Part shown: positions 83 to 41,992 of the stretch, piece by piece | Layout of the letters: each line of letters opens with the position of its first letter | How positions within the stretch are numbered: position 1 is the stretch's first letter | Assembly (NCBI RefSeq): GCF_963921235.1 | Contig: NC_086099.1 | Coordinates: 75,020,001 to 75,084,000 of the forward strand | DNA length: 64,000 bases | Source of the DNA: Mobula hypostoma | Taxonomy: Eukaryota | Reading direction: 5' to 3' | Position numbers and translations under genes: made by a program | The notes under the pieces: generated by a model | Told to the model about the DNA's origin: nothing | Seen by the model: only the letters and a program-made list of their open reading frames with translations | Database searches by the model: none

Positions 83-2120
83 CAGTGTGAGGTCTAAACA
101 AGGAGAATAAATGAATATCATGTGCGACTGAGAAAGAGATGCTAGGTTCTGATGGAGAGAAGCTGCTGGCCAGAGAGCACATTGTGTCCTGGAATTCACC
201 AAGAAATTCATGTGAGAGGATGAAAATACCCATTGTGGATAAGCTAAGCCCTCCTACACCTAAACAGTATACTGGTGATCTAACAGATAACTGCAAACGC
301 TTCAAACAGCAATTCAATATATATTTAGCAGCTAGCTGAGTGGGAGGGACTGATGAAAGATTGAAAGCATCTGTTTTTTCTGCACATAATTAGCAAAGAT
401 GCTTTGGACATCTAAAACAGCTTTTAAATTGATGAGACAGCTTTTACATTGGGCACTCTGATGACAAAATTTGACGAGCATTTTGTTCCAAGTAAAAGCA
501 TCACGTTTGATAGATATAAGTTTTTTTTTTCCCTGTGACCAGAAACAAGGTAATAGTTTTAGTCTTAGTCAAGCTTCACACGCTGACTAAGTCCTGTGAA
601 TTTGGAGATTTGAAAGACTTACTAGTTAGAGAAAGAACAGTTTGTGGAAACCCAAATAATGGGCTGAGAGAAAGATTACTGTGTGAAAACGATTTGATGC
701 TGGGAAAGGCTGTGGATATGTGTTGGGCAGCAGAGACCACATGAGCACAAGCTAAGGAGCTGCATGGGGCAGACACAACAGTATATGCTGTGAAAACAGA
801 GCAGCTGAGCACAAGGCATTTCCCAAAGCAATAGCAAAGCAGGGGAAGGCTCAAACAGCAAATGCAGCAAATGTAGAGGTAGGCACATTCCAAAGACGAG
901 ACCCGCTTATGTAAAACCCTGCAATAATCGTGGAAAGGGGATTCATTTTGTAAAATTCTGCAAAGTGAAAGGTGCACATGGTTGATGAAGAAACGAAGGA
1001 GGTTTTTGTGGATTCTCTACAGACTGCTGATGATGGTAAAACAGAATGGATCATTCCAGTGACTGTGAATGAGACAGTAATTCTATTCAAGCTTGACGCC
1101 AGAGCCCAGATGAATCCATTGTCCATGGATGATTACAGGACTCTCAAAGTAAAGAGCAAGGTTTACCCAGTTAAGTTAAAAGTGACAGGCCATACTGGAG
1201 AGAACATTCCAGTAAAAGGGGCTGAATGGTGATCTTTAAGTACAAGGAACAATACCTAAGGCACAGCAACTGATTGTGGAAAAGTGAGTACAGCATTAGG
1301 TCTGAGTGCATGTGAAAAGCTCAACCCAGTGAAAAGAGTTTTCATGGAGACTTCACAGGTCAAAGATAAACATACTTAACTCATGGAAGAGTACGCAGAT
1401 TTCTTTGAAATCCTTAGCTACCTGGCTAAGTTTATCTCTCAACTGTCAACTGTGTCAGAACCACTTAGGACATTCCTTGAGCAGCACAGTGGGTGGATTT
1501 GGTCTCACGAGCAAGAAGAGGATTTCCAGATGCTCCAAACAGTCCTAACTGAAGAGCCTATGTTGAAGTTTTACAATCCGGAAATATGTACCAGGATCTT
1601 GGCTGATGCATCCCAAACAGAAGCAATATCATGGCAAGACTGCGAAAAGCCTACCAGTCCTGAAGCCTGGAGATCAAGTGCAAATCCAGGATCACAATTC
1701 AGGCACATGGTCCATGCAAGGATATGTGCAAGAGGAAGTTGCTGCACATTCTTCCCGGATCCGGCAGAGCAAGAAACACCTCTGAGAATGAACAATGTAG
1801 ATCCATGACCACAAGCTCCAACCCATAGCTGTGACATGTCACTTGTCAGTACACCAAAGGGGCCGGCTGATATAAAAACTGAACTTGTCGATCAGAATTC
1901 TCAGAAAGACTCAAATATTAAAACACCAAATACAAGCAATACACCTGTGGAAACAAATAACAGAACTGAAAGGATTATTAAACCACCTCAGACACTGATT
2001 GAAAGTTATTCAGTTAAAAGGCAACCAGCTACAAAATGTAGATTATTGTTCCTTGCAGGTTTATGAGGAAATCATATTGTGTTTGTTTTTCTTTAAAGGG
2101 GAAGATGCGTTATATGTATA

Positions 2121-2747
2121 TGTAACACCCACTTTGCCTAGTGGCATGATCTCAGGGTGATAACCCCCTGCGCAGCCAAACCTTAGAGCTCTTGTTTGGG
2201 TGAATGCTGTGTGATTTGTCCCGTTCAAATCAGTACCCCATAATGACAAGCCGTACACAGGATGCAGTTAAATAATTAAGATTTTATAATTCTTAGTTGA
2301 ACTATGGGGTTAGTAGAGAACCGAAATATAAAATAAAAAATGGCACCACTATATCTTTATTCAGTCTGTGCACAATTAATTTGTTGGAGCTCACACAATA
2401 TCCACTTTCCACCATTCAATCTCCTCCGAACTCTGCCGGGTCCCGAGCCCCCGCTCACCAGGTCACAGCATCTCTTTGGGTGTGTCTTCTCTCTTCTTTC
2501 CCATGGTGCGTTCTGCCCAAATTCCACACAAACAAGAGCTTACAGACACACAAGAAAGAATAACATCTATCTCAATTGGTTAGCAAATGAATATGTCCGG
2601 TTATCAGTAATTATAACCCAAGCATGCTGCTACAGAGAACCCCTTACCTCAGCAGTTAATATTACAAAGAAGCCATTTTATTATAACACTACAGAGAAGC
2701 CATTTTATTAGCCTTAGCAAATAACATGAAAGAAGAAACTCCTTACA
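2121..2747 (-). repeat. 3' LTR of element B
   Basis: TG...CA termini, adjacent PPT, roughly 90% identical by eye to 4772-5403, AATAAA on the minus strand near 2356-2361. Confidence 0.92.
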
Positions 2748-3249
2748 CTCTCCCTCCACCAAATTTAGTCATGTCCTCATGATGTCCATATAATTTGCCA
2801 ACCCTTCCTGCAAACTCACCAACCCAATCCAGGTACAAAAACAGTCACATCACTCCCCAAACAGTAGACCTTATGCCCTGTTCCACAGGAGCTACATAGA
2901 CCAACCTATCTGGGAATCTCCTAATCCTCCAAGATCTCCGTCCCCACTCATCTAACCCATCAGGCTCGAACACGATGAGGAATACTTCGGGTATGCTTAC
3001 CAAATCCTCTCACAATCGATCACTCAAGCTGCCTGCAACTCGGAGCCCCCTATCTCATGTCCAGGCCCCCACTTCCTTTCCTTTAGAGTCCTGCTGTAAT
3101 CCAGGCTGCCCACAGATAATCCTCCCCACTACACCTGACTCAGTGGGAGAAGGGCCAAAAGTCTCTTCCTTAATCACGGGGAAGTTAGCGAAAGGCAGCA
3201 GGTACCACACATACAGCTCATCATCCTTCGAATCCTTATTCTTCCCCAT

Positions 3250-3650
3250 TTCCTCAAGCGGTAGCTGCTGTTTGGTTTTCTTCAAACTGGAGCACTTGGC
3301 CTGGGCTGCCTCTGCAGCCTCTTCAGCCTCCTGTAATCAAGGCATCAGCTTCTTCTTGGACTCCTCCAGTTTAGTGGTCCCAGAACTTATCTCCAGCTCT
3401 TTCTTCTTAATGACTTCTTCCAGTTTTCTCATTTCATTTAGGCTGTCGATGTTCATCTTCAAGTCTCCTTCAAGCTTCCACTCCCCTCTTCTGAAATCTG
3501 TCCGCCATTGCTTCACTCCCTCTGAATTGTATTCAGATTCCCCTCTCGGTGCTCTCAGTTCTCTGTTGGCTCTAGTCAGACAGCTTCCTTTGTCTTCCCC
3601 AACGTGCAAATCTTCCAACTTGTTTTGGATCAATTTCTCCAGTTTCTGCT
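3250..3650 (-). pseudogene. Captured sarcomeric myosin heavy chain rod fragments (MYH16-like), two non-contiguous blocks fused in frame
   Basis: Translation LEDLHVGEDKGSCLTRAN...KLEGDLKMNIDSLNEMRKLEEVIKKKELEISS, then [35 protein letters not shown]. These match the class II myosin rod motifs LDDLQAEEDKVNTLTKA...KLEGDLK and [33 protein letters not shown] (recalled from memory). Confidence 0.88.
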
Positions 3651-3828
3651 CGGAATTGTGTTTCTCTGATTCCACTTCAAACTTGATCCAATAGAGACAG
3701 TCACGCAGCTCCTCCACCACCATCGTCTTCTTCAACACTAGGAAATTCAACTGATGCGTTGGGTAATTTCTCCAATAATAACCACAGAATTCCACAAATG
3801 AACGCAGAACAGTCACCAGCTACAACCT

Positions 3829-4300
3829 TCACCAGACCTGGCACAGGTCCAGAGAAAGTTTTACTTCTTTAACCCCTAGTTGCCTGTGATCCCACACTCG
3901 CCTCACTTCATAGCCTTCCAAGGCAAATCCAAATACTAGGAGATCATCCAAATACACCAGAACTCCAAATAATTCCACATCCCCCACCGTCTTCCCCATG
4001 CCCTGCAGGAAAGTTGCAAAGGCTCCGGATATGCCCTGGGGCATCTTTTCGGATTGAGAAAATCCCAGCGGACCCATAACGGCTTTCTTCTCCTTGTCAG
4101 CCTCACTCATCGGGATCTGGCAACATCCACTCCTCAGATCCAGCACAGTAAACCACTCGCACCCCTCAGACAGACCAGCGCGTCTTCGACCCTCGGGACC
4201 ACGTACTGGTCAGGGACGGTGCGCCTGTTCAGAGTCCCATAATCCACACACATGCTGCCTGCATCCTCCACATCTGCAGGGGCCAATCTCCGCGACCTCT
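3829..4300 (-). pseudogene. Gypsy reverse transcriptase remnant (element B)
   Basis: LDLRSG, MPQG and YLDD motifs; frameshifted upstream. Confidence 0.9.
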
Positions 4301-4771
4301 CTCTTACCGAGGTGTCTCAGTGGTCAACTCCCCACTCTAGTGGTACGTCAGAGCATCCACTAAGAGAGTCTCACCCTCAGATACTTCCCCCCCACCATAC
4401 CACCCTCAGCTTTCATTTAAATTCGGTACCGGCCCAATGCTGCTACACACGTCCTCACAAGCAGCTTGAAACACTGGGTGCACAGACAATGCCCCCAAAC
4501 AGCTCTCACCCGACTCCTTCTGGCAGGCCCCCATTCACCTCTTCACCAGCGGGGTGTTGGTCTCCTCCAGAATCGAAACACTGCCCATCTCAACAGTGTC
4601 TGGACACATCAGCACTAACGATTCATGACCCTCGGACACCTACACATGGGCCTCCGAGAACTCCATTTTCACTGACCAATAACCGTCGTCCCACAGAGAC
4701 ACACCAGCACTGATTTAAACAGGGCAATCACACAGCCTTCCACAGAACCAAATCCCAGACAAGTCCCTAAA

Positions 4772-5403
4772 TGTAACACTCACTTTGCCTAGTGGCATGA
4801 TCTCGGGGTGATAACTCCTGGCCCGGCCAAACCTTAGAACTCTCGTTTGGGTGGATGCTGTGCAATGTGTCCCCTGTTTCAAATCAGTACCCCGTAATGA
4901 CAAGTCGTACACAGGATGCAGTTAAATAATTAAGATTTTATAATTCTTACTTGAACTATGGGATTAGTAGAGAAACAAAATATAAAATTAAAAAAGGTGA
5001 CACTATATCCTTATTCAGTCTGTGCACAATTAATTTGTTGGAGCTCACGCAATATACACTTTCCACCATTCAATCTCCTCCAAACTCTGCCGGGTCCCAA
5101 GCCCCCGCTCACCGGGTCACAACATCTCTTCGGGTGCGTCTTCTCTCTTCTTCCTCATGGCGTGTTCTGCCCAAATCCCGCGCAAGCAACAACTTACAGA
5201 CACACAAGAAAGAATAACATCTATCCCAATTGGCTAGCAATTGTATACAAGTCCCGTTATCAGTACTTATAACCCAAGCATGCTGCTACAGAGAACCCCT
5301 TACCTCAGCAGTTAATATTACAAAGAAGCCATTTTATTATAACACTACAGAGAAGCCATTTTATTAGCCTTAGCATGTAACATGAGAGAAGAAACCACTT
5401 ATA
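4772..5403 (-). repeat. 5' LTR of element B
   Basis: Direct-repeat partner of 2121-2747. Confidence 0.92.
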
Positions 5404-5724: not shown

Positions 5725-6906
5725 CAATGTTCCCTCTAATTTTTAGTAGTCAGTGTGCACAAAAATCTTATGTTGTGCAATTTTTTTTCTGTGACAAAAG
5801 TATGTGTGCACTGAATGCACACATGCACAGTTTATGTAGGTTTACAAAATATTTGACATAAGTACAATCTTTAGATCTGAATTTGAAGTACAGAATGAGA
5901 CATTTGTTGACAGATATGTCTGTGGTTTCATCAACTGTTAATGTGTGAAAATCTGCTGATGCTATTTCTTCAAACATGTCTTTCTGAACAATATAGTTGA
6001 TAGTCTCCAGAAATTCGAACGCATAATTTTTGCTTCGCTGGCTGTCTAAGAGTTGAACATACTTTTCCATATGTTCATTAATGTATTGAACTGAATGTAA
6101 AGAGTTATTCATTTTAACAGCTAACAACACACTGTCGATAAGAACTTTGATCTCCTCTGGGTTTGATCGTTTTCTCTCTTGCTCATCTGCACTCAACCGT
6201 AACATGTGTAGCACTCCTGTAACAGGTAATGACAGGTTCTGTTGCCTGAGCTTTTGTACACCATCCAAATAAGATTTACTTGCCAAATGACGCTTCAAAA
6301 AGTCAAGTTTCCAAATGTCATCTCACTTCTTTCCACCAGCAAATTCTACAGCAACTTTCACATCACAACAATGCAAACAGATAACTCCAGTTTCGGAATC
6401 ATACATAAATATTTCTCGTAGCTGAACGTTCATGACCTCGTGAGCTTTTGGTGTAGCAGTTTCTACTATTTTGTTAAGCCATTCAACATAAAACAAATTT
6501 GCAGTTCTTTTGCACTTCAAGCCCTTCGCTTCTTTTGAATTTACATAGTGAATCAATATTTTTCAATAAAAACTTAGTAAGCTATCTACAGGATTTGAAA
6601 CAAATCTTTGTAAACATTACGATATGAACACTGTCCGCCAAAGATGGCTGCTGCCGTGATGCAGCTGTACAAACCGGAACAGGAAAGGTGAAGTGACGTA
6701 AATTAGTGACGTGCATTGTGGTATTTGAAAAAATGACTAACTAATTAACAGAAACATTTAGCTAAAGATTATTTTCAATAAGTATAATTATTAATTACTA
6801 CATTATTTTAGGTAACTAACCTTTTGTGCGCACATTCATTTCCTTTGTGCGCTGGTTGAAAAACGTGTGTGCGTGTGCACACACGCACAGCTTAGAAGGA
6901 ACATAG
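5725..6906 (-). mobile_element. Internally deleted hAT DNA transposon (ZNF862/ZMYM-type transposase N-terminus)
   Basis: TIRs CAATGTTCCCTCTAA (5725-5739) and TTAGAAGGAACATAG (6892-6906). 8-bp TSD GTTATCAG/GTCATCAG. ORFs 6323-6556 and 5768-6298 contain a CxxC...KRHLAS zinc-finger-like motif and TVDETTDIS. Confidence 0.88.
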
Positions 6907-7890: not shown

Positions 7891-7972
7891 GAATCAGCCA
7901 TGATCATATTGAATGGCGGTGCAGGCTCGAAGGGCCGAATGGCCTACTCCTGCACCTATTTTCTATGTTTCT
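7891..7972 (+). mobile_element. CR1 LINE 3' end fragment
   Basis: ATCAGCCATGAT...GAATGGCCTACTCCTGCACCTA followed by a TTCTATGT tail. Confidence 0.85.
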
Positions 7973-8696
7973 AAATTGTAGGGCTATGTCAAATATCTCA
8001 TAAGCATCCATGTGAGGTTTTATTAATTAAGTTGTAAATTACTCTAGACACCAAATCTTGCAATGGCTAAAACAACCCATTTTCTTCCCCTGAGGTATCG
8101 GGGCAGTCCTATGTGCCCCCCTGGGGTGTCTTAAACTATAGACGCAAGCCAACAGTGTTCTGAACCAGACTGCATCCCATATCTGCTCCCACAGCAGCCC
8201 AAGCATCGTCAAGTTCATCACACCAGTGGGGCAAAAACATAGAGTGGCCAGATCAGTTCACAGCCTTGGCACTGCAGCAAAATGAACATTGATGGGAGAG
8301 CGAGCAAATTCAGCCCAACCCTCACTACCGTTCTCGACACTTGAGCTTCCAGACTATCTGTGCCAGCATTTAAATTGTTCAAGCACCAGCTAGTGCCTCG
8401 CTCTAGGAGCTGGACCCCAGTGCCATGATATGTTTGGGCCACCCGGCCCAAAGGCATTCTTGATCTCACCAGATCAGTTCAGCACTTGGAGCAATCCTAC
8501 CTTGCACCCAGGTTAGGTGAACAAGCATCAAAGCTCTTCCGCATTGACTCCACTCCAAATCTCTCACTCCTTCTCCAGCCGTGATACCAACTCCTCTTGT
8601 CACAAAAAAGGCACAATCTTTTAAATTTCTGAGTTCATATTGGATTTTATGATCTTCAGTATAACTTCCATATCTCACACTTGGCCAATCCCTGTT

Positions 8697-30965: not shown

Positions 30966-33817
30966 GAAACATAGAAACATAGAAATAAGGTGCAGGAGTA
31001 GGCCATTTGGCCCTTCGAGCCTGCACCGCCATTTATTATGATCATGGCTGATCATCCAACTCAGAACCCCGCCCCAGCCTTCCCTCCATACCCCCATACC
31101 CCTAACATCGGGAACAATCTTCCTGCATCTAGCCTGTCCAATCCCTTTAGGATCTTATACGTTTCAATCAGATCCCCCCTCAATCTTCTAAATTCCAATG
31201 AGTACAAGCCCAATTCATCCAGTCTTTCTTCATATGAAAGTCCCGCCATCCCAGGAATCAATCTGGTGAACCTTCTTTGTACTCCCTCTATGGCAAAGAT
31301 GTCTTTCCTCAGATTAGGGGACCAAAACTGCACACAATACTCCAGGTGTGGTCTCACCAAGGCCTTGTACAACTGCAGTAGTACGTCCCTGCTCCTGTAC
31401 TCGAATCCTCTGGCTATAAATGCCAGCATACCATTCGGCTTTTTCACCGCCTGCTGTACCTGCATGCCCACTTTCAATGACTGGTGTATAATGACACCCA
31501 GGTCTCGTTGCACCTCCCCTTTTCCTAATTGGCCACCATTCAGATAATAATCTGTTTTCCTATTTTTGCCACCAAAGTGGATAACTTCACATTTATCCAC
31601 ATTAAATTGCATCTGCCATGAATTTGCCCACTCACCCAACCTATCCAAGTCACCCTGCATCCTCTCAGCATCCTCCTCACTGCTAACACTGCCACCCAGC
31701 TTCGTGTCATCTGCAAACTTGGAGATGCTGCATTTAATTCCCTCATCCAAGTCATTAATATATATGGTAAACAACTGGGGTCCCAGCACTGAGCCTTGCG
31801 GTACCCCACTAGTCACCGCCTGCCATTCTGAAAAGGTCCCGTTTATTCCCACTCTTTGCTTCCTGTCTGCTAACCAATTCTCCACCCACACCAATACCTT
31901 ACCCCCAATACTGTGTGCTTTAAGTTTGCACACTAATCTCCTGTGTGGGACCTTGTCAAAAGCCTTTTGAAAATCCAAATATACCACATCCACTGGTTCT
32001 CCCCTATCCACTCTACTAGTTACATCCTCAAAAAATTCTATGAGATTCGTCAGACATGATTTTCCTTTCACAAATCCATGCTGACTTTGTCCGATCATTT
32101 CACCACTTTCCAAATGCGCTGTTATCACATCCTTGATAACTGACTCCAGCAGTTTCCCCACCACCGACGTTAGGCTAACCAGTCTATAATTCCCCGGTTT
32201 CTCTCTCCCTCCTTTTTTAAAAAGTGGGGTTACATTAGCCACCCTCCAATCCTCAGGAACTAGTCCAGAATCTAACGAGTTTTGAAAAATTATCACTAAT
32301 GCATCCACTATTTCTTGGGCTACTTCTTTAAGCACTCTAGGATGCAGACCATCTGGCCCTGGGGATTTATCTGCCTTCAATCCCTTCAACTCACCTAACA
32401 CCACTTCCCTACTAACATGTATTTCGCTCAGTTCCTCCATCTCACTGGACCCTCTGTCCCTTACTATTTCTGGAAGATTTTTTATGTCCTCCTTAGTGAA
32501 GACAGAACCAAAGTAATTATTCAATTGGTCTGCCATGTCCTTGCTCCCCATAATCAATTCACCTATTTCTGTCTGCAGGGGACCTACATTTGTCTTTACC
32601 AGTCTTTTCCTTTTTACATATCTATAAAAGCTTTTACAGTCCGTTTTTATGTTCCCTGCCAGTTTTCTCTCATAATCTTTTTTCCCCTTCCTAATTAAGC
32701 CCTTTGTCCTCCTCTGCTGAACTCTGAATATCTCCCAGTCCTCAGGTAAGCCACTTTCTCTGGCTAATTTGTATGCTTCTTCTTTGGAATTGATACTATC
32801 CCTAATTTCTCTTGTCAGCCACGGGTGCACTACCTTCCTTAATTTATTCTTTTGCCAAACTGGGATGAACAATTGTTGTAGTTCATCCATGCAACCTTTA
32901 AATGCTTGCCATTGCATATCCACCGTCAATCCTTTAAGTGTCATTTGCCAGTCTATCTTAGCTAATTCACGTCTCATACCTTCAAAGTTACCCCTCTTTA
33001 AGTTCAGAACCTTTGTTTCTGAATTAACTATGTCACTCTCCACCTTAATGAAGAATTCCACCATATTATGGTCACTCTTACCCAAGGGGCCTCTCACGAC
33101 AAGATCGCTAATTAACCCTTCCTCATTGCTCAAAACCCAGTCCAGAATAGCCTGCTCTCTAGTTGGTTCCTCGACATGTTGGTTCAAAAAACCATCCCGC
33201 ATACATTCCAAGAAATCCTCTTCCTCAGCACCTTTACCAATTTGGTTCACCCAGTCTACATGTAGATTGAAGTCACCCATTATAACTGCTGTTCCTTCAT
33301 TGCACACATTTCTAATTTCCTGTTTAATACCATCTCCGACCTCACCACTACTGTTAGGTGGCCTGTACACAACTCCCACCAGCGTCTTCTGCCCCTTAGT
33401 GTTACGCAGCTCTACCCATATCGATTCCACATCTTCCTGCCTTATGTCCTTCCTTTCTGTTGCATTAATCTCTTCTTTAACCAGCAACGCCACCCCACCT
33501 CCCCTTCCTTCATGTCTATCCCTCCTGAATATTGAATATCCCTGAACGTTGAGCTCCCATCCCTGGTCACCCTGGAGCCATGTCTCTGTAATCCCAACTA
33601 TATCATAATCATTAATAACAATCTGCACTTTCAATTCATCCACCTTATTACGAATGTTCCTTGCATTGACACATAAAGACTTCAGGCGCTCTTTTACAAC
33701 TCTCTTAGCCCTTATACAATTATGTTGGAAAGTGGCCCTTTTTAATGCTTGCCCTGGATTTGTCGGCTTGCCACTTTTACTTTTCTCCTATATCTAGGAT
33801 ATATCCTATATCCTGAG
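30966..33817 (-). mobile_element. Young 5'-truncated CR1 LINE
   Basis: Long open ORF2, (TTTCTATG)n tail at ~30962-30984, candidate TSD GTCATA at 30960-30965 and 33818-33823. Confidence 0.95.
31061..33643 (-). CDS. CR1 ORF2: APE endonuclease plus reverse transcriptase, 860 aa open, C-terminal segment deleted
   Basis: GITETW, GVVYRPP, MGDFN and SDH (endonuclease); [30 protein letters not shown] and FADD (RT). Confidence 0.93.
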   Translation of the reverse strand: MDELKVQIVINDYDIVGITETWLQGDQGWELNVQGYSIFRRDRHEGRGGGVALLVKEEINATERKDIRQEDVESIWVELRNTKGQKTLVGVVYRPPNSSGEVGDGIKQEIRNVCNEGTAVIMGDFNLHVDWVNQIGKGAEEEDFLECMRDGFLNQHVEEPTREQAILDWVLSNEEGLISDLVVRGPLGKSDHNMVEFFIKVESDIVNSETKVLNLKRGNFEGMRRELAKIDWQMTLKGLTVDMQWQAFKGCMDELQQLFIPVWQKNKLRKVVHPWLTREIRDSINSKEEAYKLARESGLPEDWEIFRVQQRRTKGLIRKGKKDYERKLAGNIKTDCKSFYRYVKRKRLVKTNVGPLQTEIGELIMGSKDMADQLNNYFGSVFTKEDIKNLPEIVRDRGSSEMEELSEIHVSREVVLGELKGLKADKSPGPDGLHPRVLKEVAQEIVDALVIIFQNSLDSGLVPEDWRVANVTPLFKKGGREKPGNYRLVSLTSVVGKLLESVIKDVITAHLESGEMIGQSQHGFVKGKSCLTNLIEFFEDVTSRVDRGEPVDVVYLDFQKAFDKVPHRRLVCKLKAHSIGGKVLVWVENWLADRKQRVGINGTFSEWQAVTSGVPQGSVLGPQLFTIYINDLDEGIKCSISKFADDTKLGGSVSSEEDAERMQGDLDRLGEWANSWQMQFNVDKCEVIHFGGKNRKTDYYLNGGQLGKGEVQRDLGVIIHQSLKVGMQVQQAVKKPNGMLAFIARGFEYRSRDVLLQLYKALVRPHLEYCVQFWSPNLRKDIFAIEGVQRRFTRLIPGMAGLSYEERLDELGLYSLEFRRLRGDLIETYKILKGLDRLDAGRLFPMLGVWGYGGKAGAGF

Positions 33818-35105
33818 GTCATATGTACCTCAGTACAATGAAAACCTTGTCTTGCATATTATTCATTACAGAGTACATTGAGGTTGTACAAGTTACATTA
33901 ACAACATAACTCAGATTAAAGTGTAAGAGCTACAGTGAGCTGGTAGACAATAAGCTTCACGTTCATAATGAGGCAGATTGTGAAGTCAGGAGTCCATTTT
34001 ATCAGACTGGGGAACAAATTAATAAAAGTCTTATAACAACAGGGTAGAAGCTAACCTTGAGCCTACTTGTACATATTCAAAGTTCAAAAGATTATAGCAA
34101 ATTTTATTATTCATGTACATGTATGTCATAATATATAACCCTGAGATTCATTTCCCTGCAGTCATACTCAGCAATTCTATAGAATAATAACTATAACAGG
34201 ATCAATGAAAGATCAACTATAGTGCAGAAGACAACAAACTGTGCAAATGCAAATATAAATAAATAGCAATAAATAACAAGAACATGAGAAAACAAGATAA
34301 AGCACCCTTAAACTGAGATCATTGATGGTGGGGGCATTTCAATGAATGGACAAGCGAGTATAGTTATCCCCTTTATTCAAGAGCCAGATGGTTGTAGGTT
34401 AATAACTTTTCTTGAACCTTGTGGTGTGAGTCCTGAGGATCTTGTACCTTCTAATTGATGGCAGAAGTGAGAAAATAGGATCTCTGATGATTGATGCTGC
34501 TTTCCTACGACAGTGTTTCATGTAGATGTGTTCAATGGTTGGGAGAGCTTTACTGATGGTGTACTGAGCCGAATACACTACCTTTGTAGGATTTTCTATT
34601 CAAAGGCATTGGTGTTTCTAGACCAGGCCATGACACAGTCAGTCAATAAGGGGTAGACAATTTAGAACGGAATTGAGAAAAAACTTTTTCACACAGAGAG
34701 TTGTGGTTTTGTGGAATGCTCTGCCTCAGAAGGCAGTGGAGGCCAATTCTCTGGATTCTTTCAAGAAAGAGTTAGAGCTCTTAAAGATAGCAGAGTGAAG
34801 GGATATGGGGAGAAGGCAGGAAAAGGGTACTGATTGTGGATGATCAGCCATGATCACAGTGAATGGTGGTGCTGGCTCAAAGGGCTGAATGGCCTACTCC
34901 TGCACCTATTGTCTATTGTCTATTGTCTAATACACTTTCCACTGCACATCTAGAGAAATTTGTCGAAGTTTTAGATGTCATGCCGAATCTTTGCATGTTG
35001 TCAGGCCTTTACATCTTCTACTGAATGAGAGCGGAGAGAAGAGAGGATGTTCGGGGAGGGTGGGATCTTTGGTTATGCTGACTACTTTACTGAGGTAGTG
35101 AGAAC
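33818..35105 (-). mobile_element. Two nested Rex1/Babar-type 3' fragments (tail of the outer one at 30934-30965; inner one 34076-34992)
   Basis: Tails (ATTGGA)n and (TTCAAAG)n; LPSIRRYKILRTHTTRFKKSY-like C-terminus on the minus strand. Confidence 0.65.
34629..34928 (+). mobile_element. CR1 3' fragment
   Basis: FFTQRVVVLWNALPQKAVEA and a (CTATTGT)n tail. Confidence 0.88.
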
Positions 35106-41256: not shown

Positions 41257-41992
41257 TGTACGGGGTCTCTTTTTTGTATGTTAAATTTAAAATGGTTTCT
41301 TTGTTATGTTAATCTTTTAAATTGCTGCATATGTGGATTAAAATGGCTTCTATGTTATGTTAAATGCTGCGAAAGTCTCCAGCTAGACCTTTGCTTGGGT
41401 TAATACAGATAGCAGGGTGCTATTAGCCAATGGGTGTTCATGTATCGTTTTTTTCGGATGATAATGCTGTCTCATATGACTGGGAACGGGGTTTTTGGCA
41501 GGGAGTCGGAGGAGAGACGGGGAGGACGGCGGACGTGTGAAAACTCTCCAGTTGATCACTCCAGGTGGTCCCGAGCCGCGAGTCAACGGGGTCCGGGTGG
41601 TCCCAAGCCACGAGCCAACGGGGTCCGGGTGGTCCCGAGCCACGAGCCGACGGTTTCCAGGTGGTCCCGAGCCACAAGCCGACGGGGTCCGGGTGGTCGC
41701 CAGGAATTTCTGAGCTCCAACTTGTGCACGAAGAACTTGGGCTTTGATAAGTCTGGCGCCTTTTTTTTCCCATTACTTCCTTTTCTGTATTGAACTTATA
41801 TTAGTTGCATAGGCTTAGTAATATCTATGAAGTGTACTTGGTAGAACGTACTGTGTGTGCTGGCTGATGATTGATGTGTGGAATTGATTCAGGTGGCAGT
41901 GGTACAGCAACCGACCCAGCGGGAAGTGTTCGGGCCGGGGTTGGGCTGGATTTCCCCTAGACATATACGAACCAATATAGCGGAGCGTTACA
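41257..41992 (+). repeat. Solo LTR with 4-bp TSD TGTA
   Basis: TGTACGGGG...GCGTTACA termini; TGTA at 41253-41256 and 41993-41996. Confidence 0.85.
41560..41698 (+). repeat. 32-bp GC-rich tandem repeat, ~4.3 copies, inside the solo LTR
   Basis: TCC(A/G)GGTGGTCCCGAGCCACGAGCCAACGGGG units start at 41560, 41592, 41624, 41656 and 41688. Confidence 0.93.

What the first reader, a model, noticed from the sequence alone, without database searches (positions are those of the whole stretch)
3250..3650. Gypsy LTR element carries intron-less myosin heavy chain (MYH16-like) rod fragments in place of its integrase
Seen in sequence: on the minus strand the pol frame runs from RNase H-like NYPTHQLNFLVLK...KFEV directly into a coiled-coil sequence. 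Against the class II myosin rod recalled from memory, LEKLIQ...KLEGDLK aligns ungapped over 62 aa (about 25 identities by hand count). A second block, [32 protein letters not shown], matches a much later rod segment, and its stop sits at an Arg position, consistent with CGA>TGA decay. The residues DLKMNIDSLNEM, LEEVIKK and AEAAQA look most like MYH16. Inference: block 1 should span exon junctions of a myosin gene yet has no introns, implying capture of spliced host mRNA by template switching during reverse transcription. This would be host-gene transduction by a vertebrate non-retroviral LTR element.
Basis: partly seen in the sequence, partly recalled or inferred. Interest (0 to 1): 0.9.

Follow-up and report, generated by a model that had tools for sequence, protein, structure and literature searches.

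The report
Retrotransposon carrying a captured myosin fragment
A dead copy of a Ty3/Gypsy jumping gene in a ray genome carries pieces of a spliced muscle-myosin message, picked up once by an ancestral element and since spread to dozens of sites in stingray and manta genomes; this kind of event is known but rarely documented for such elements in vertebrates.

Summary
On the minus strand an LTR-bounded unit (2121-5403; LTRs 627 and 632 nt, K2P 0.098) holds a broken Ty3/Gypsy pol remnant: a post-protease linker, RT and part of RNase H. The same frame runs into about 440 nt derived from a class II myosin rod. The similarity is positional, not compositional: PDB E 1.5e-7 and 2e-4, profile E 1.3e-11, shuffle z 13-37. 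Block 1 crosses three exon junctions of the parental gene type without introns, so a spliced RNA was the source. The capture is not private to this copy. At least 22 annotated loci in Mobula hypostoma, M. birostris, Hypanus sabinus and Hemitrygon akajei share the chimera, on many chromosomes and inside unrelated genes. Other copies keep longer myosin stretches, so the window's two blocks are what deletions left of one longer insert. The closest intron-containing gene is a Narcine bancroftii gene that NCBI names MYH16 (64% identity). MYH16 identity is plausible but I did not test it with a tree. No integrase remains. I file it as a new member of a known kind: host-mRNA transduction by an LTR element, followed by non-autonomous amplification. 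Interest is moderate.

The parts
4772..5403 (-). 5' LTR of the element (in element orientation)
   Evidence: Direct repeat with 2121-2747: 627 aligned columns, 9.1% differences, K2P 0.098, 2 gap events. It starts TGTAAC.. and ends ..CTTA(C/T)A on the + strand.
4688..4771 (-). Leader between the 5' LTR and the first pol-like sequence; no primer binding site recognised
   Evidence: No similarity found. Its position follows from the LTR end and the first pol match at 4687.
3664..4687 (-). Broken pol remnant: post-protease linker, reverse transcriptase, start of the connection, and a fragment of RNase H. It has 2 frameshifts, 6 in-frame stops and 3 large internal deletions. Gag and protease upstream, and the RNase H end plus integrase downstream, are absent.
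   Evidence: Pfam RVT_1 E 1.8e-8. The only PDB hits are Ty3 RT, 4ol8 E 1.2e-10 and 7q5b. By tblastn the region matches P0176 92-175, P0174 141-385 and P0174 498-532, the last inside PF17917.
3226..3663 (-). Myosin heavy chain rod-derived insert, in sense orientation and in the pol frame. Two colinear rod segments correspond to about 1001-1106 and 1400-1434 of lungfish myosin-7-like P0013. One in-frame stop. Three more deletions than the longest family members.
   Evidence: It is 64% identical over 100 aa to the Narcine bancroftii gene P0120 (E 4e-33) and 34% over 133 aa to P0013.
3538..3624 (-). Equivalent of one whole parental exon ('exon a'), 87 nt or 29 codons, flanked on both sides by sequence of the neighbouring exons with no intron
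   Evidence: In genomic contig L001 the same exon is 87 nt, between an AG acceptor and a GT donor. In Narcine, isoforms P0120 and P0011 differ by exactly this 29-residue cassette.
3404..3537 (-). Equivalent of the next parental exon ('exon b'), continuous with exon a and with the head of exon c
   Evidence: L001 exon b is bounded by AG and GT, with introns of about 200 nt and 1.1 kb on either side. Several independent single-exon ORFs from public runs end at the same bounds.
2761..3225 (-). 3' internal region of unknown origin, conserved within the family
   Evidence: It aligns with the C-terminal parts of P0003, P0004, P0116, P0119 and P0173. No Pfam hit and no homologue outside the family.
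2748..2760 (-). Polypurine tract (GGTGGAGGGAGAG on the minus strand) abutting the 3' LTR
   Evidence: Read from the sequence; 12 of 13 bases are purines.
2121..2747 (-). 3' LTR of the element
   Evidence: Partner of 4772-5403. The C-terminal tails of the Mobula gene models P0002 and P0003 match it at 63-71% aa identity (P0118 at 54%), so those copies end in the same LTR family.

Best explanation
Window 2121-5403 (minus strand) is an old, dead, internally deleted copy of a non-autonomous Ty3/Gypsy LTR retrotransposon family of myliobatiform rays. The internal region of this family carries a fragment of spliced myosin heavy chain rod mRNA where the end of RNase H and the integrase used to be. 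Shown here: the insert lies between the LTRs. It is colinear with the myosin II rod. It crosses three exon junctions without introns. The same chimera is dispersed in at least four ray species. Inferred: the capture happened once, in an ancestor of Mobula and the dasyatid stingrays. The likely route is the one known for retroviral transduction. Either an LTR-driven read-through transcript of a neighbouring myosin gene was spliced, or a co-packaged myosin mRNA was present. Reverse transcriptase then switched templates back onto element RNA. The insert lies in sense orientation, is internal to the rod, and has no mRNA 3' end and no poly(A). A muscle-specific donor would be rare in germ cells. 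These points favour the read-through variant. Because the family's own RT carries a shared deletion, the chimera must then have been copied by proteins supplied by intact relatives. Repeated short deletions within the repetitive coiled-coil sequence produced subfamilies. The window belongs to the subfamily also seen in Mobula (P0001, P0003, P0118). The window copy itself has no function. At family level, the visible consequences are gene models wrongly named as myosins and element-derived exons in models of unrelated genes.
For: LTR pair, TG..CA ends and polypurine tract. Ty3/Gypsy RT and RNase H remnant. Positional myosin-rod homology. No other myosin-like sequence in the 64 kb. Intron-less state: L001 and L002 exons with AG/GT; the Narcine cassette exon of 29 residues and a gene range of 173 kb for a 254-aa product. 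Family and dispersal. P0001 and P0118 lie antisense in a VPS13-like gene, an orthologous site in two Mobula species, and P0003 lies in an ADGRA3-like gene. Shared RT deletion and a protease-like region in Hypanus copies. Six Hypanus models from different loci are 93-97% identical without gaps over 729 residues, which indicates recent amplification there. Longer inserts in other copies, spanning P0013 about 940-1191 plus 1384-1434.
Against: I could not fetch DNA of any other copy because the assemblies were too large for the tool. LTRs and target-site duplications are therefore shown only for the window, and predicted introns in the public gene models may hide or create junctions. The exon bounds come from proxies: two genomic contigs of unknown species and the Narcine isoforms. 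They do not come from the donor gene of the window's own species. The target-site duplication is ambiguous (GTATA versus ATATA in AT-rich flanks), and I recognised no primer binding site. Pfam does not call Myosin_tail_1 on the window piece. MYH16 identity is not tree-tested. The data do not separate read-through plus one template switch, two template switches, or a DNA-level event.
Confidence: 0.85

Rival explanations
1. The capture happened at the DNA level. A LINE-made processed pseudogene fragment of the myosin gene landed in, or recombined with, a genomic copy of the element. That copy was then transcribed and amplified.
For: The insert is spliced, which a LINE-made retrocopy would also be. 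The window holds a LINE ORF with endonuclease and RT domains, so such machinery exists in this genome.
Against: LINE-made retrocopies keep the mRNA 3' end and a poly(A) tail and are truncated at the 5' end. This insert is internal to the rod (about residues 940-1434 of about 1940), with no 3' end and no poly(A). It lies in sense orientation and in frame with pol.
Confidence: 0.1
2. The chimeric reading frame encodes a working protein. It could be a coiled-coil module used by the non-autonomous element, or a fusion taken over by the host.
For: Three Hypanus loci have an uninterrupted 729-codon frame, and six models are 93-97% identical. Element-derived segments appear in models of SDHAF3 and an SDF2-like gene; SDHAF3's LYR domain is confirmed by Pfam.
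Against: Ascertainment bias: only open copies are annotated as genes. The RT carries a family-wide deletion, and Pfam finds no domain in P0173. Different subfamilies lost different parts of the insert. The window copy is broken many times.
Confidence: 0.05
3. The element merely inserted into a myosin gene or pseudogene, and the myosin pieces are host exons lying next to it.
For: None beyond the co-occurrence itself.
Against: The pieces lie between the two LTRs. No other myosin-like sequence exists in the 64 kb. The same chimera sits inside VPS13-like and ADGRA3-like genes on other chromosomes. Exons are joined without introns.
Confidence: 0.02
4. The likeness to myosin is a by-product of coiled-coil composition.
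For: Pfam gives no Myosin_tail_1 hit on the window piece; its only hit is a weak one to another coiled-coil family.
Against: The hits are confined to one colinear place in the rod, with negative scores elsewhere. Shuffle z scores are 13-37, with a negative control near zero. Identity to a Narcine myosin-tail gene is 64%.
Confidence: 0.01

Closest known systems
Host mRNA capture by retroviruses and endogenous retroviruses, for example the crocodilian ERV lineages carrying nectin3 or KIT-ligand (PMC4299795)
   Same: A spliced host sequence sits between the LTRs at the expense of an element gene. The capture predates speciation, and the lineage then multiplied within the genome.
   Different: Here the carrier is a Ty3/Gypsy (Metaviridae-type) retrotransposon, not a retrovirus. 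Only an internal, non-functional fragment of the host gene is carried, not a complete reading frame. No sign of purifying selection was tested or seen.
Maize Bs1 and other plant LTR retrotransposons with transduced gene fragments (reviewed in PMC13317346)
   Same: A non-autonomous LTR element carries fragments of a cellular gene, attributed to aberrant template switching or read-through, and can feed chimeric transcripts.
   Different: This host is a vertebrate. There is one donor gene, against three in Bs1. Expression of the chimera was not examined here.
Non-autonomous LTR elements (LARD/TRIM type) copied by proteins of autonomous relatives
   Same: LTRs, a polypurine tract and an internal region without working gag or pol, yet many dispersed copies.
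   Different: The internal region still shows recognisable pol remnants plus a host-derived insert.
Host protein fragments found in transposon reference sequences (survey in PMC3597677)
   Same: The host sequence is fixed in the family, not just present in one copy.
   Different: That survey did not cover cartilaginous fishes. I found no report of a myosin rod fragment in a Gypsy element in my literature searches, which are limited to the open library.
LINE-made processed pseudogenes
   Same: An intron-less copy of a host mRNA.
   Different: No poly(A), no mRNA 3' end, embedded in an LTR element, and amplified as part of it.

Membership tests
Ty3/Gypsy LTR retrotransposon | Pair of long terminal repeats with TG..CA ends | tested here: met
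   2121-2747 and 4772-5403, 91% identical, starting TGTAAC.. and ending ..CTTACA/..CTTATA
Ty3/Gypsy LTR retrotransposon | Polypurine tract next to the 3' LTR | tested here: met
   13-nt tract with 12 purines at 2748-2760 on the minus strand
Ty3/Gypsy LTR retrotransposon | Primer binding site after the 5' LTR and a target-site duplication | tested here: inconclusive
   No TGG-type primer site seen by eye in 4740-4771. The flanks GTATA and ATATA match at 4 of 5 positions in AT-rich sequence.
Ty3/Gypsy LTR retrotransposon | Reverse transcriptase of the Ty3/Gypsy type followed by RNase H | tested here: met
   The only PDB hits are Ty3 RT. Identity to teleost Gypsy pol fragments with RVT_1 and RT_RNaseH is 45-49%, and the RNase H fragment falls inside PF17917.
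Ty3/Gypsy LTR retrotransposon | gag, protease and integrase (autonomous element) | tested here: not met
   None detected in the window copy. A protease-like region survives in Hypanus copies. It is therefore a non-autonomous derivative, not an autonomous member.
Class II myosin heavy chain rod (origin of the insert) | Significant, colinear similarity to the rod at one position | tested here: met
Class II myosin heavy chain rod (origin of the insert) | Pfam Myosin_tail_1 above the curated cut-off | tested here: not met
   No hit on the window piece. The Narcine gene product P0178 scores 34.9 bits against a cut-off of 38.1. The fragments are short and decayed.
MYH16 orthology group | Groups with named MYH16 sequences in a tree, to the exclusion of other MYH paralogues | tested here: inconclusive
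   No named full-length MYH16 could be fetched because of the length filters on the searches. Indirect evidence: NCBI names six family models, and four isoforms of the Narcine gene, MYH16 or myosin-16-like. The Narcine gene is 59% identical to the L001 exon type against 46-48% to myosin-7 and fast types. The decayed window piece itself does not discriminate (44% against 42%).
MYH16 orthology group | Conserved gene neighbourhood | not testable with these tools
   The Narcine locus came back without neighbours or DNA.
Transduced (retro-captured) host sequence in an LTR element | Insert lies between the LTRs and shares junctions across dispersed copies | tested here: met
   host contexts are
Transduced (retro-captured) host sequence in an LTR element | Insert lacks the donor's introns | tested here: met
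   Three exon junctions are contiguous in 3404-3663. The bounds come from L001 (AG/GT) and the Narcine cassette exon. The donor gene of the window's own species was not available.
Transduced (retro-captured) host sequence in an LTR element | An intron-containing donor gene exists separately | tested here: met
   The Narcine gene spans 173 kb for a 254-aa product and has alternative isoforms. This was shown in a torpediniform ray, not in a myliobatiform.

The most novel reading that the evidence does not exclude
The pol-remnant/myosin coiled-coil fusion is not just a passenger. In Hypanus sabinus the 729-codon frame, kept open at several 93-97% identical loci, would encode a protein under selection. 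It might be a coiled-coil module that helps the non-autonomous element exploit its helper's particles, or a host-co-opted product. The element-borne myosin segment would also supply real exons to genes such as SDHAF3.
Probability: 0.06. Interest if true: 0.75.

Novelty: new member of a known kind. Interest (0 to 1): 0.45.

Why it matters
Capture of host mRNA is textbook for retroviruses and is well documented for plant LTR retrotransposons. Clear cases in vertebrate Ty3/Gypsy elements are scarce. This case has a traceable history: one capture, survival across a family-level split of rays, different deletion derivatives, and apparently recent amplification in one species. That makes it a useful natural example of how such chimeras arise and decay. 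It also has a practical side. At least a dozen public gene models named myosin-like or MYH16 in ray genomes are copies of this element. So are models named as isoforms of TMEM192 and GSTT2, which are largely or almost wholly element sequence, and parts of the models for SDHAF3 and an SDF2-like gene. Annotation and gene-family counts for myosins in batoids should take this into account.

Tried and rejected
1. A second captured host gene. Piece 4420-4542(-) hit Pfam BaffR-Tall_bind above its cut-off (23.2 bits, E 6e-5), and its top PDB hits were TNFRSF13C (E 0.1-0.8). I rejected it because the same DNA, read in another frame, matches the post-protease region of Gypsy pol (P0176 92-175, E 8e-17) and is read in that frame in relatives.

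2. DNA of other copies. Five look-ups returned no DNA because the assemblies were too large or the gene range too long. Two proteins were not on record.

3. P0192, a 54-aa member of P0117's cluster, lies on bacterial contigs. That cluster membership is an artefact.

4. Pfam and PDB searches with the 53-aa RNase H piece alone were negative. The label was settled only by comparison with teleost Gypsy pol fragments.

5. A tree with named MYH16 was not possible. The length filter of the word-based search excludes full-length myosins for short queries, and the one exhaustive search uses 50% representatives without names.

6. Rfam found nothing in the window.

7. The 239-codon ORF on the plus strand (2975-3694), antisense to the insert, is best read as a by-product of coiled-coil codon usage.

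(a) My script printed stop-free segments of the element with coordinates, which shows indirectly where the frames are interrupted.
(b) Notebook entry 2 describes one internal deletion junction at residue level.
(c) In my reasoning I wrote out, from memory, a stretch of a myosin rod and short motifs of BAFF-R and of Gypsy RNase H. None of these was used as input or as evidence.

Full report
**What is at the coordinates.**
The minus-strand frame through 3900-3055 reads an RT remnant, a short RNase H-like stretch and then a charged coiled-coil sequence. The coiled coil is myosin-derived. Piece 3340-3672(-) hits only class II myosin heavy chains in the PDB, always at one place in the rod (Myosin-4 999-1101, E 1.5e-7; MYH7 996-1097, E 3e-6). 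Alignments to other parts of the same rods score below zero. The piece after the single in-frame stop hits MYH7 1397-1423. A profile of the window pieces plus three relatives finds two colinear stretches on MYH7, with E 1.3e-11.

In a search of 1.84 billion representative proteins, every hit I checked was another copy of the chimera or a myosin heavy chain or single myosin exon. In the alignment search, every hit outside the family carries Pfam Myosin_tail_1. Shuffling the window residues destroys the score: z is 17 and 13 against a lungfish myosin and 37 against a Narcine gene. A target that lacks the block 2 region gives z = -0.9. Pfam does not call Myosin_tail_1 on the decayed piece.

**The carrier.**
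Direct repeats at 2121-2747 and 4772-5403 are 91% identical (K2P 0.098, two gap events). They begin TG and end CA. On the minus strand a 13-nt polypurine tract abuts the repeat at 2747. This is an LTR pair around a 2-kb internal region, oriented on the minus strand. A target-site duplication is only suggested (GTATA versus ATATA), and I recognised no primer binding site.

The RT piece passes Pfam RVT_1, and its only PDB hits are Ty3 RT. My last alignment search returned teleost Ty3/Gypsy pol fragments (P0174, P0175, P0176) that carry RVT_1 and RT_RNaseH domains. Against them:
- window 4687-4436 matches the post-protease linker;
- window 4316-3769 matches the RT at 45-49% identity;
- window 3771-3664 matches residues 498-532 of P0174, inside its RNase H domain.

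The pol remnant has two frameshifts, six in-frame stops and three large internal deletions. Gag and protease are missing upstream. Everything after the middle of RNase H, including integrase, is missing downstream. The myosin-derived stretch starts where the RNase H match ends and runs in the same frame. Between it and the polypurine tract lie about 465 nt of unknown origin that are conserved in the family.

**A family, not a single event.**
The 159-codon ORF found gene models in Mobula hypostoma at 65-79% identity. Further searches brought the list to at least 22 loci:
- M. hypostoma: 8 loci
- M. birostris: 5 loci
- Hypanus sabinus: at least 7 in the first searches, plus up to eight more in one 90% cluster
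- Hemitrygon akajei: 2 loci

All four species are Myliobatiformes. The copies lie on many chromosomes and inside unrelated genes. P0001 and P0118 lie antisense in a VPS13-like gene in the two Mobula species, which looks like an orthologous insertion. P0003 lies in an ADGRA3-like gene.

The copies share the RT remnant, the RNase H fragment, the myosin stretch and the 3' region. The tails of P0002 and P0003 match the window's LTR at 63-71% aa identity, and P0118 at 54%. A deletion in the RT fingers region is shared with a Hypanus copy, which still has a protease-like region. The family is therefore non-autonomous.

Six Hypanus models from different loci align without gaps over 729 residues at 93-97% identity. 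This points to recent amplification in that species. The window's LTR divergence of about 10% marks it as an old copy.

**One longer insert, variously deleted.**
Laid on lungfish myosin P0013, other copies cover about 940-1191 and 1384-1434. The window's subfamily (also P0001, P0118, P0003) keeps about 1001-1115 and 1384-1434. The window's two blocks are therefore remnants of a single longer insert, not two captures. Compared with the longest members, the window has three more deletions, one of them private to it. All copies lack the rod between about 1192 and 1399.

**Intron-less state.**
Short ORF-like hits from public sequencing runs proved to be single myosin exons. Two such genomic contigs were fetched (L001, L002). 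L001 carries three consecutive exons of the type closest to the insert, with canonical AG and GT sites and introns of about 200 nt and 1.1 kb. The middle-left exon is 87 nt.

Independently, two isoforms of a Narcine bancroftii gene differ by exactly one 29-residue cassette at the same place. That gene spans 173 kb for a 254-residue product with a Myosin_tail_1 match.

In the window, the equivalents of these exons are contiguous. The 87-nt exon equivalent is 3538-3624, flanked directly by its neighbours. Block 1 crosses three exon junctions in total. L002 shows that the later rod segment begins at an exon start. The source was therefore a spliced RNA. The caveat is that the exon bounds come from proxies, not from the donor gene of the window's own species.

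**Which myosin.**
The window block is 64-67% identical to the Narcine gene and 35-44% identical to everything else. Other family copies are 51-68% identical to the Narcine gene. That gene is 59% identical to the L001 exon type against 46-48% for myosin-7 and fast types. NCBI's pipeline names four Narcine isoforms and six family models MYH16 or myosin-16-like, and names others after different myosins. MYH16 is an ancient, intron-rich jaw-muscle myosin known from sharks (PMC6402096).

**Mechanism.**
The shown facts are these. The insert is spliced, sense-oriented and internal to the element. It has no poly(A) and no mRNA 3' end. The same junctions occur in dispersed copies.

The inference is retroviral-style transduction, followed by copying in trans by intact relatives. 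I favour LTR-driven read-through of a neighbouring myosin gene, splicing, and one non-homologous template switch. My reason is that a jaw-muscle mRNA should be rare in germ cells. This choice is not tested. A DNA-level origin through a LINE-made retrocopy is less likely, because such copies keep the 3' end and the poly(A) tail.

The later deletions lie within repetitive coiled-coil sequence. That fits slippage or template switching at short repeats.

**Comparison with known systems.**
The closest parallels are host mRNA capture by endogenous retroviruses of crocodilians (PMC4299795) and gene-fragment transduction by plant LTR retrotransposons such as Bs1 (PMC13317346). Host fragments fixed in transposon families have also been surveyed (PMC3597677). 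I found no report of this ray family or of a myosin fragment in a Gypsy element, though the library is limited to open papers. I file it as a new member of a known kind.

No DNA of other copies could be read. The public gene models may contain predicted introns that hide or create junctions. None was used as evidence.

Noticed in passing
window 31061-33643 (-): An 860-codon open frame with endonuclease (Exo_endo_phos, E 1e-11) and reverse transcriptase (RVT_1, E 3e-33) domains. It is a well-preserved LINE ORF2. An 81-nt repeat at 30972-31052 has copies at 7893-7973 and 34843-34916.
   Followed up: partly
window about 140-2070 (+): Remnant of a different LTR-type element on the plus strand, directly next to the chimeric element. 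It has gag-like and protease-like ORFs and an RT_RNaseH_2 match at 1383-1805 (E 7e-6). I did not check whether the chimeric element inserted into it.
   Followed up: no
window 4420-4542 (-): Pfam BaffR-Tall_bind hit above the curated cut-off, with weak TNFRSF13C hits in the PDB. It lies in a frame other than the conserved pol frame, so I judge it a chance match of a short cysteine-rich model.
   Followed up: yes
window 2975-3694 (+): A 239-codon ORF antisense to the myosin-derived insert. It is probably a by-product of the codon usage of the coiled coil on the other strand.
   Followed up: no
public gene models P0009, P0173, P0194, P0177 (Hypanus sabinus, Mobula birostris, Hemitrygon akajei): Models named SDHAF3 isoform X1, TMEM192 isoform X1 and GSTT2 isoform X1, plus an SDF2-like model, contain sequence of this element. 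P0194 is almost wholly element sequence, and residues 256-728 of P0173's 729 match the window's element. P0009 has a real LYR domain fused to the element's myosin part. These are either exonisation or annotation artefacts.
   Followed up: partly
Hypanus sabinus models P0173, P0185, P0190, P0188, P0186, P0183: Six models from different loci align without gaps at 93-97% identity, and three of them have exactly 729 residues. This subfamily is young, in contrast with the old window copy.
   Followed up: partly
window 41560-41698: GC-rich 32-nt tandem repeat, 4.3 copies. The region 56-58 kb has a raised G+C content of 0.52, and its ORFs give no Pfam hit.
   Followed up: no
window 5768-6298 (-): A 176-codon ORF just outside the element's 5' LTR, with no Pfam match. 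Origin unknown.
   Followed up: no
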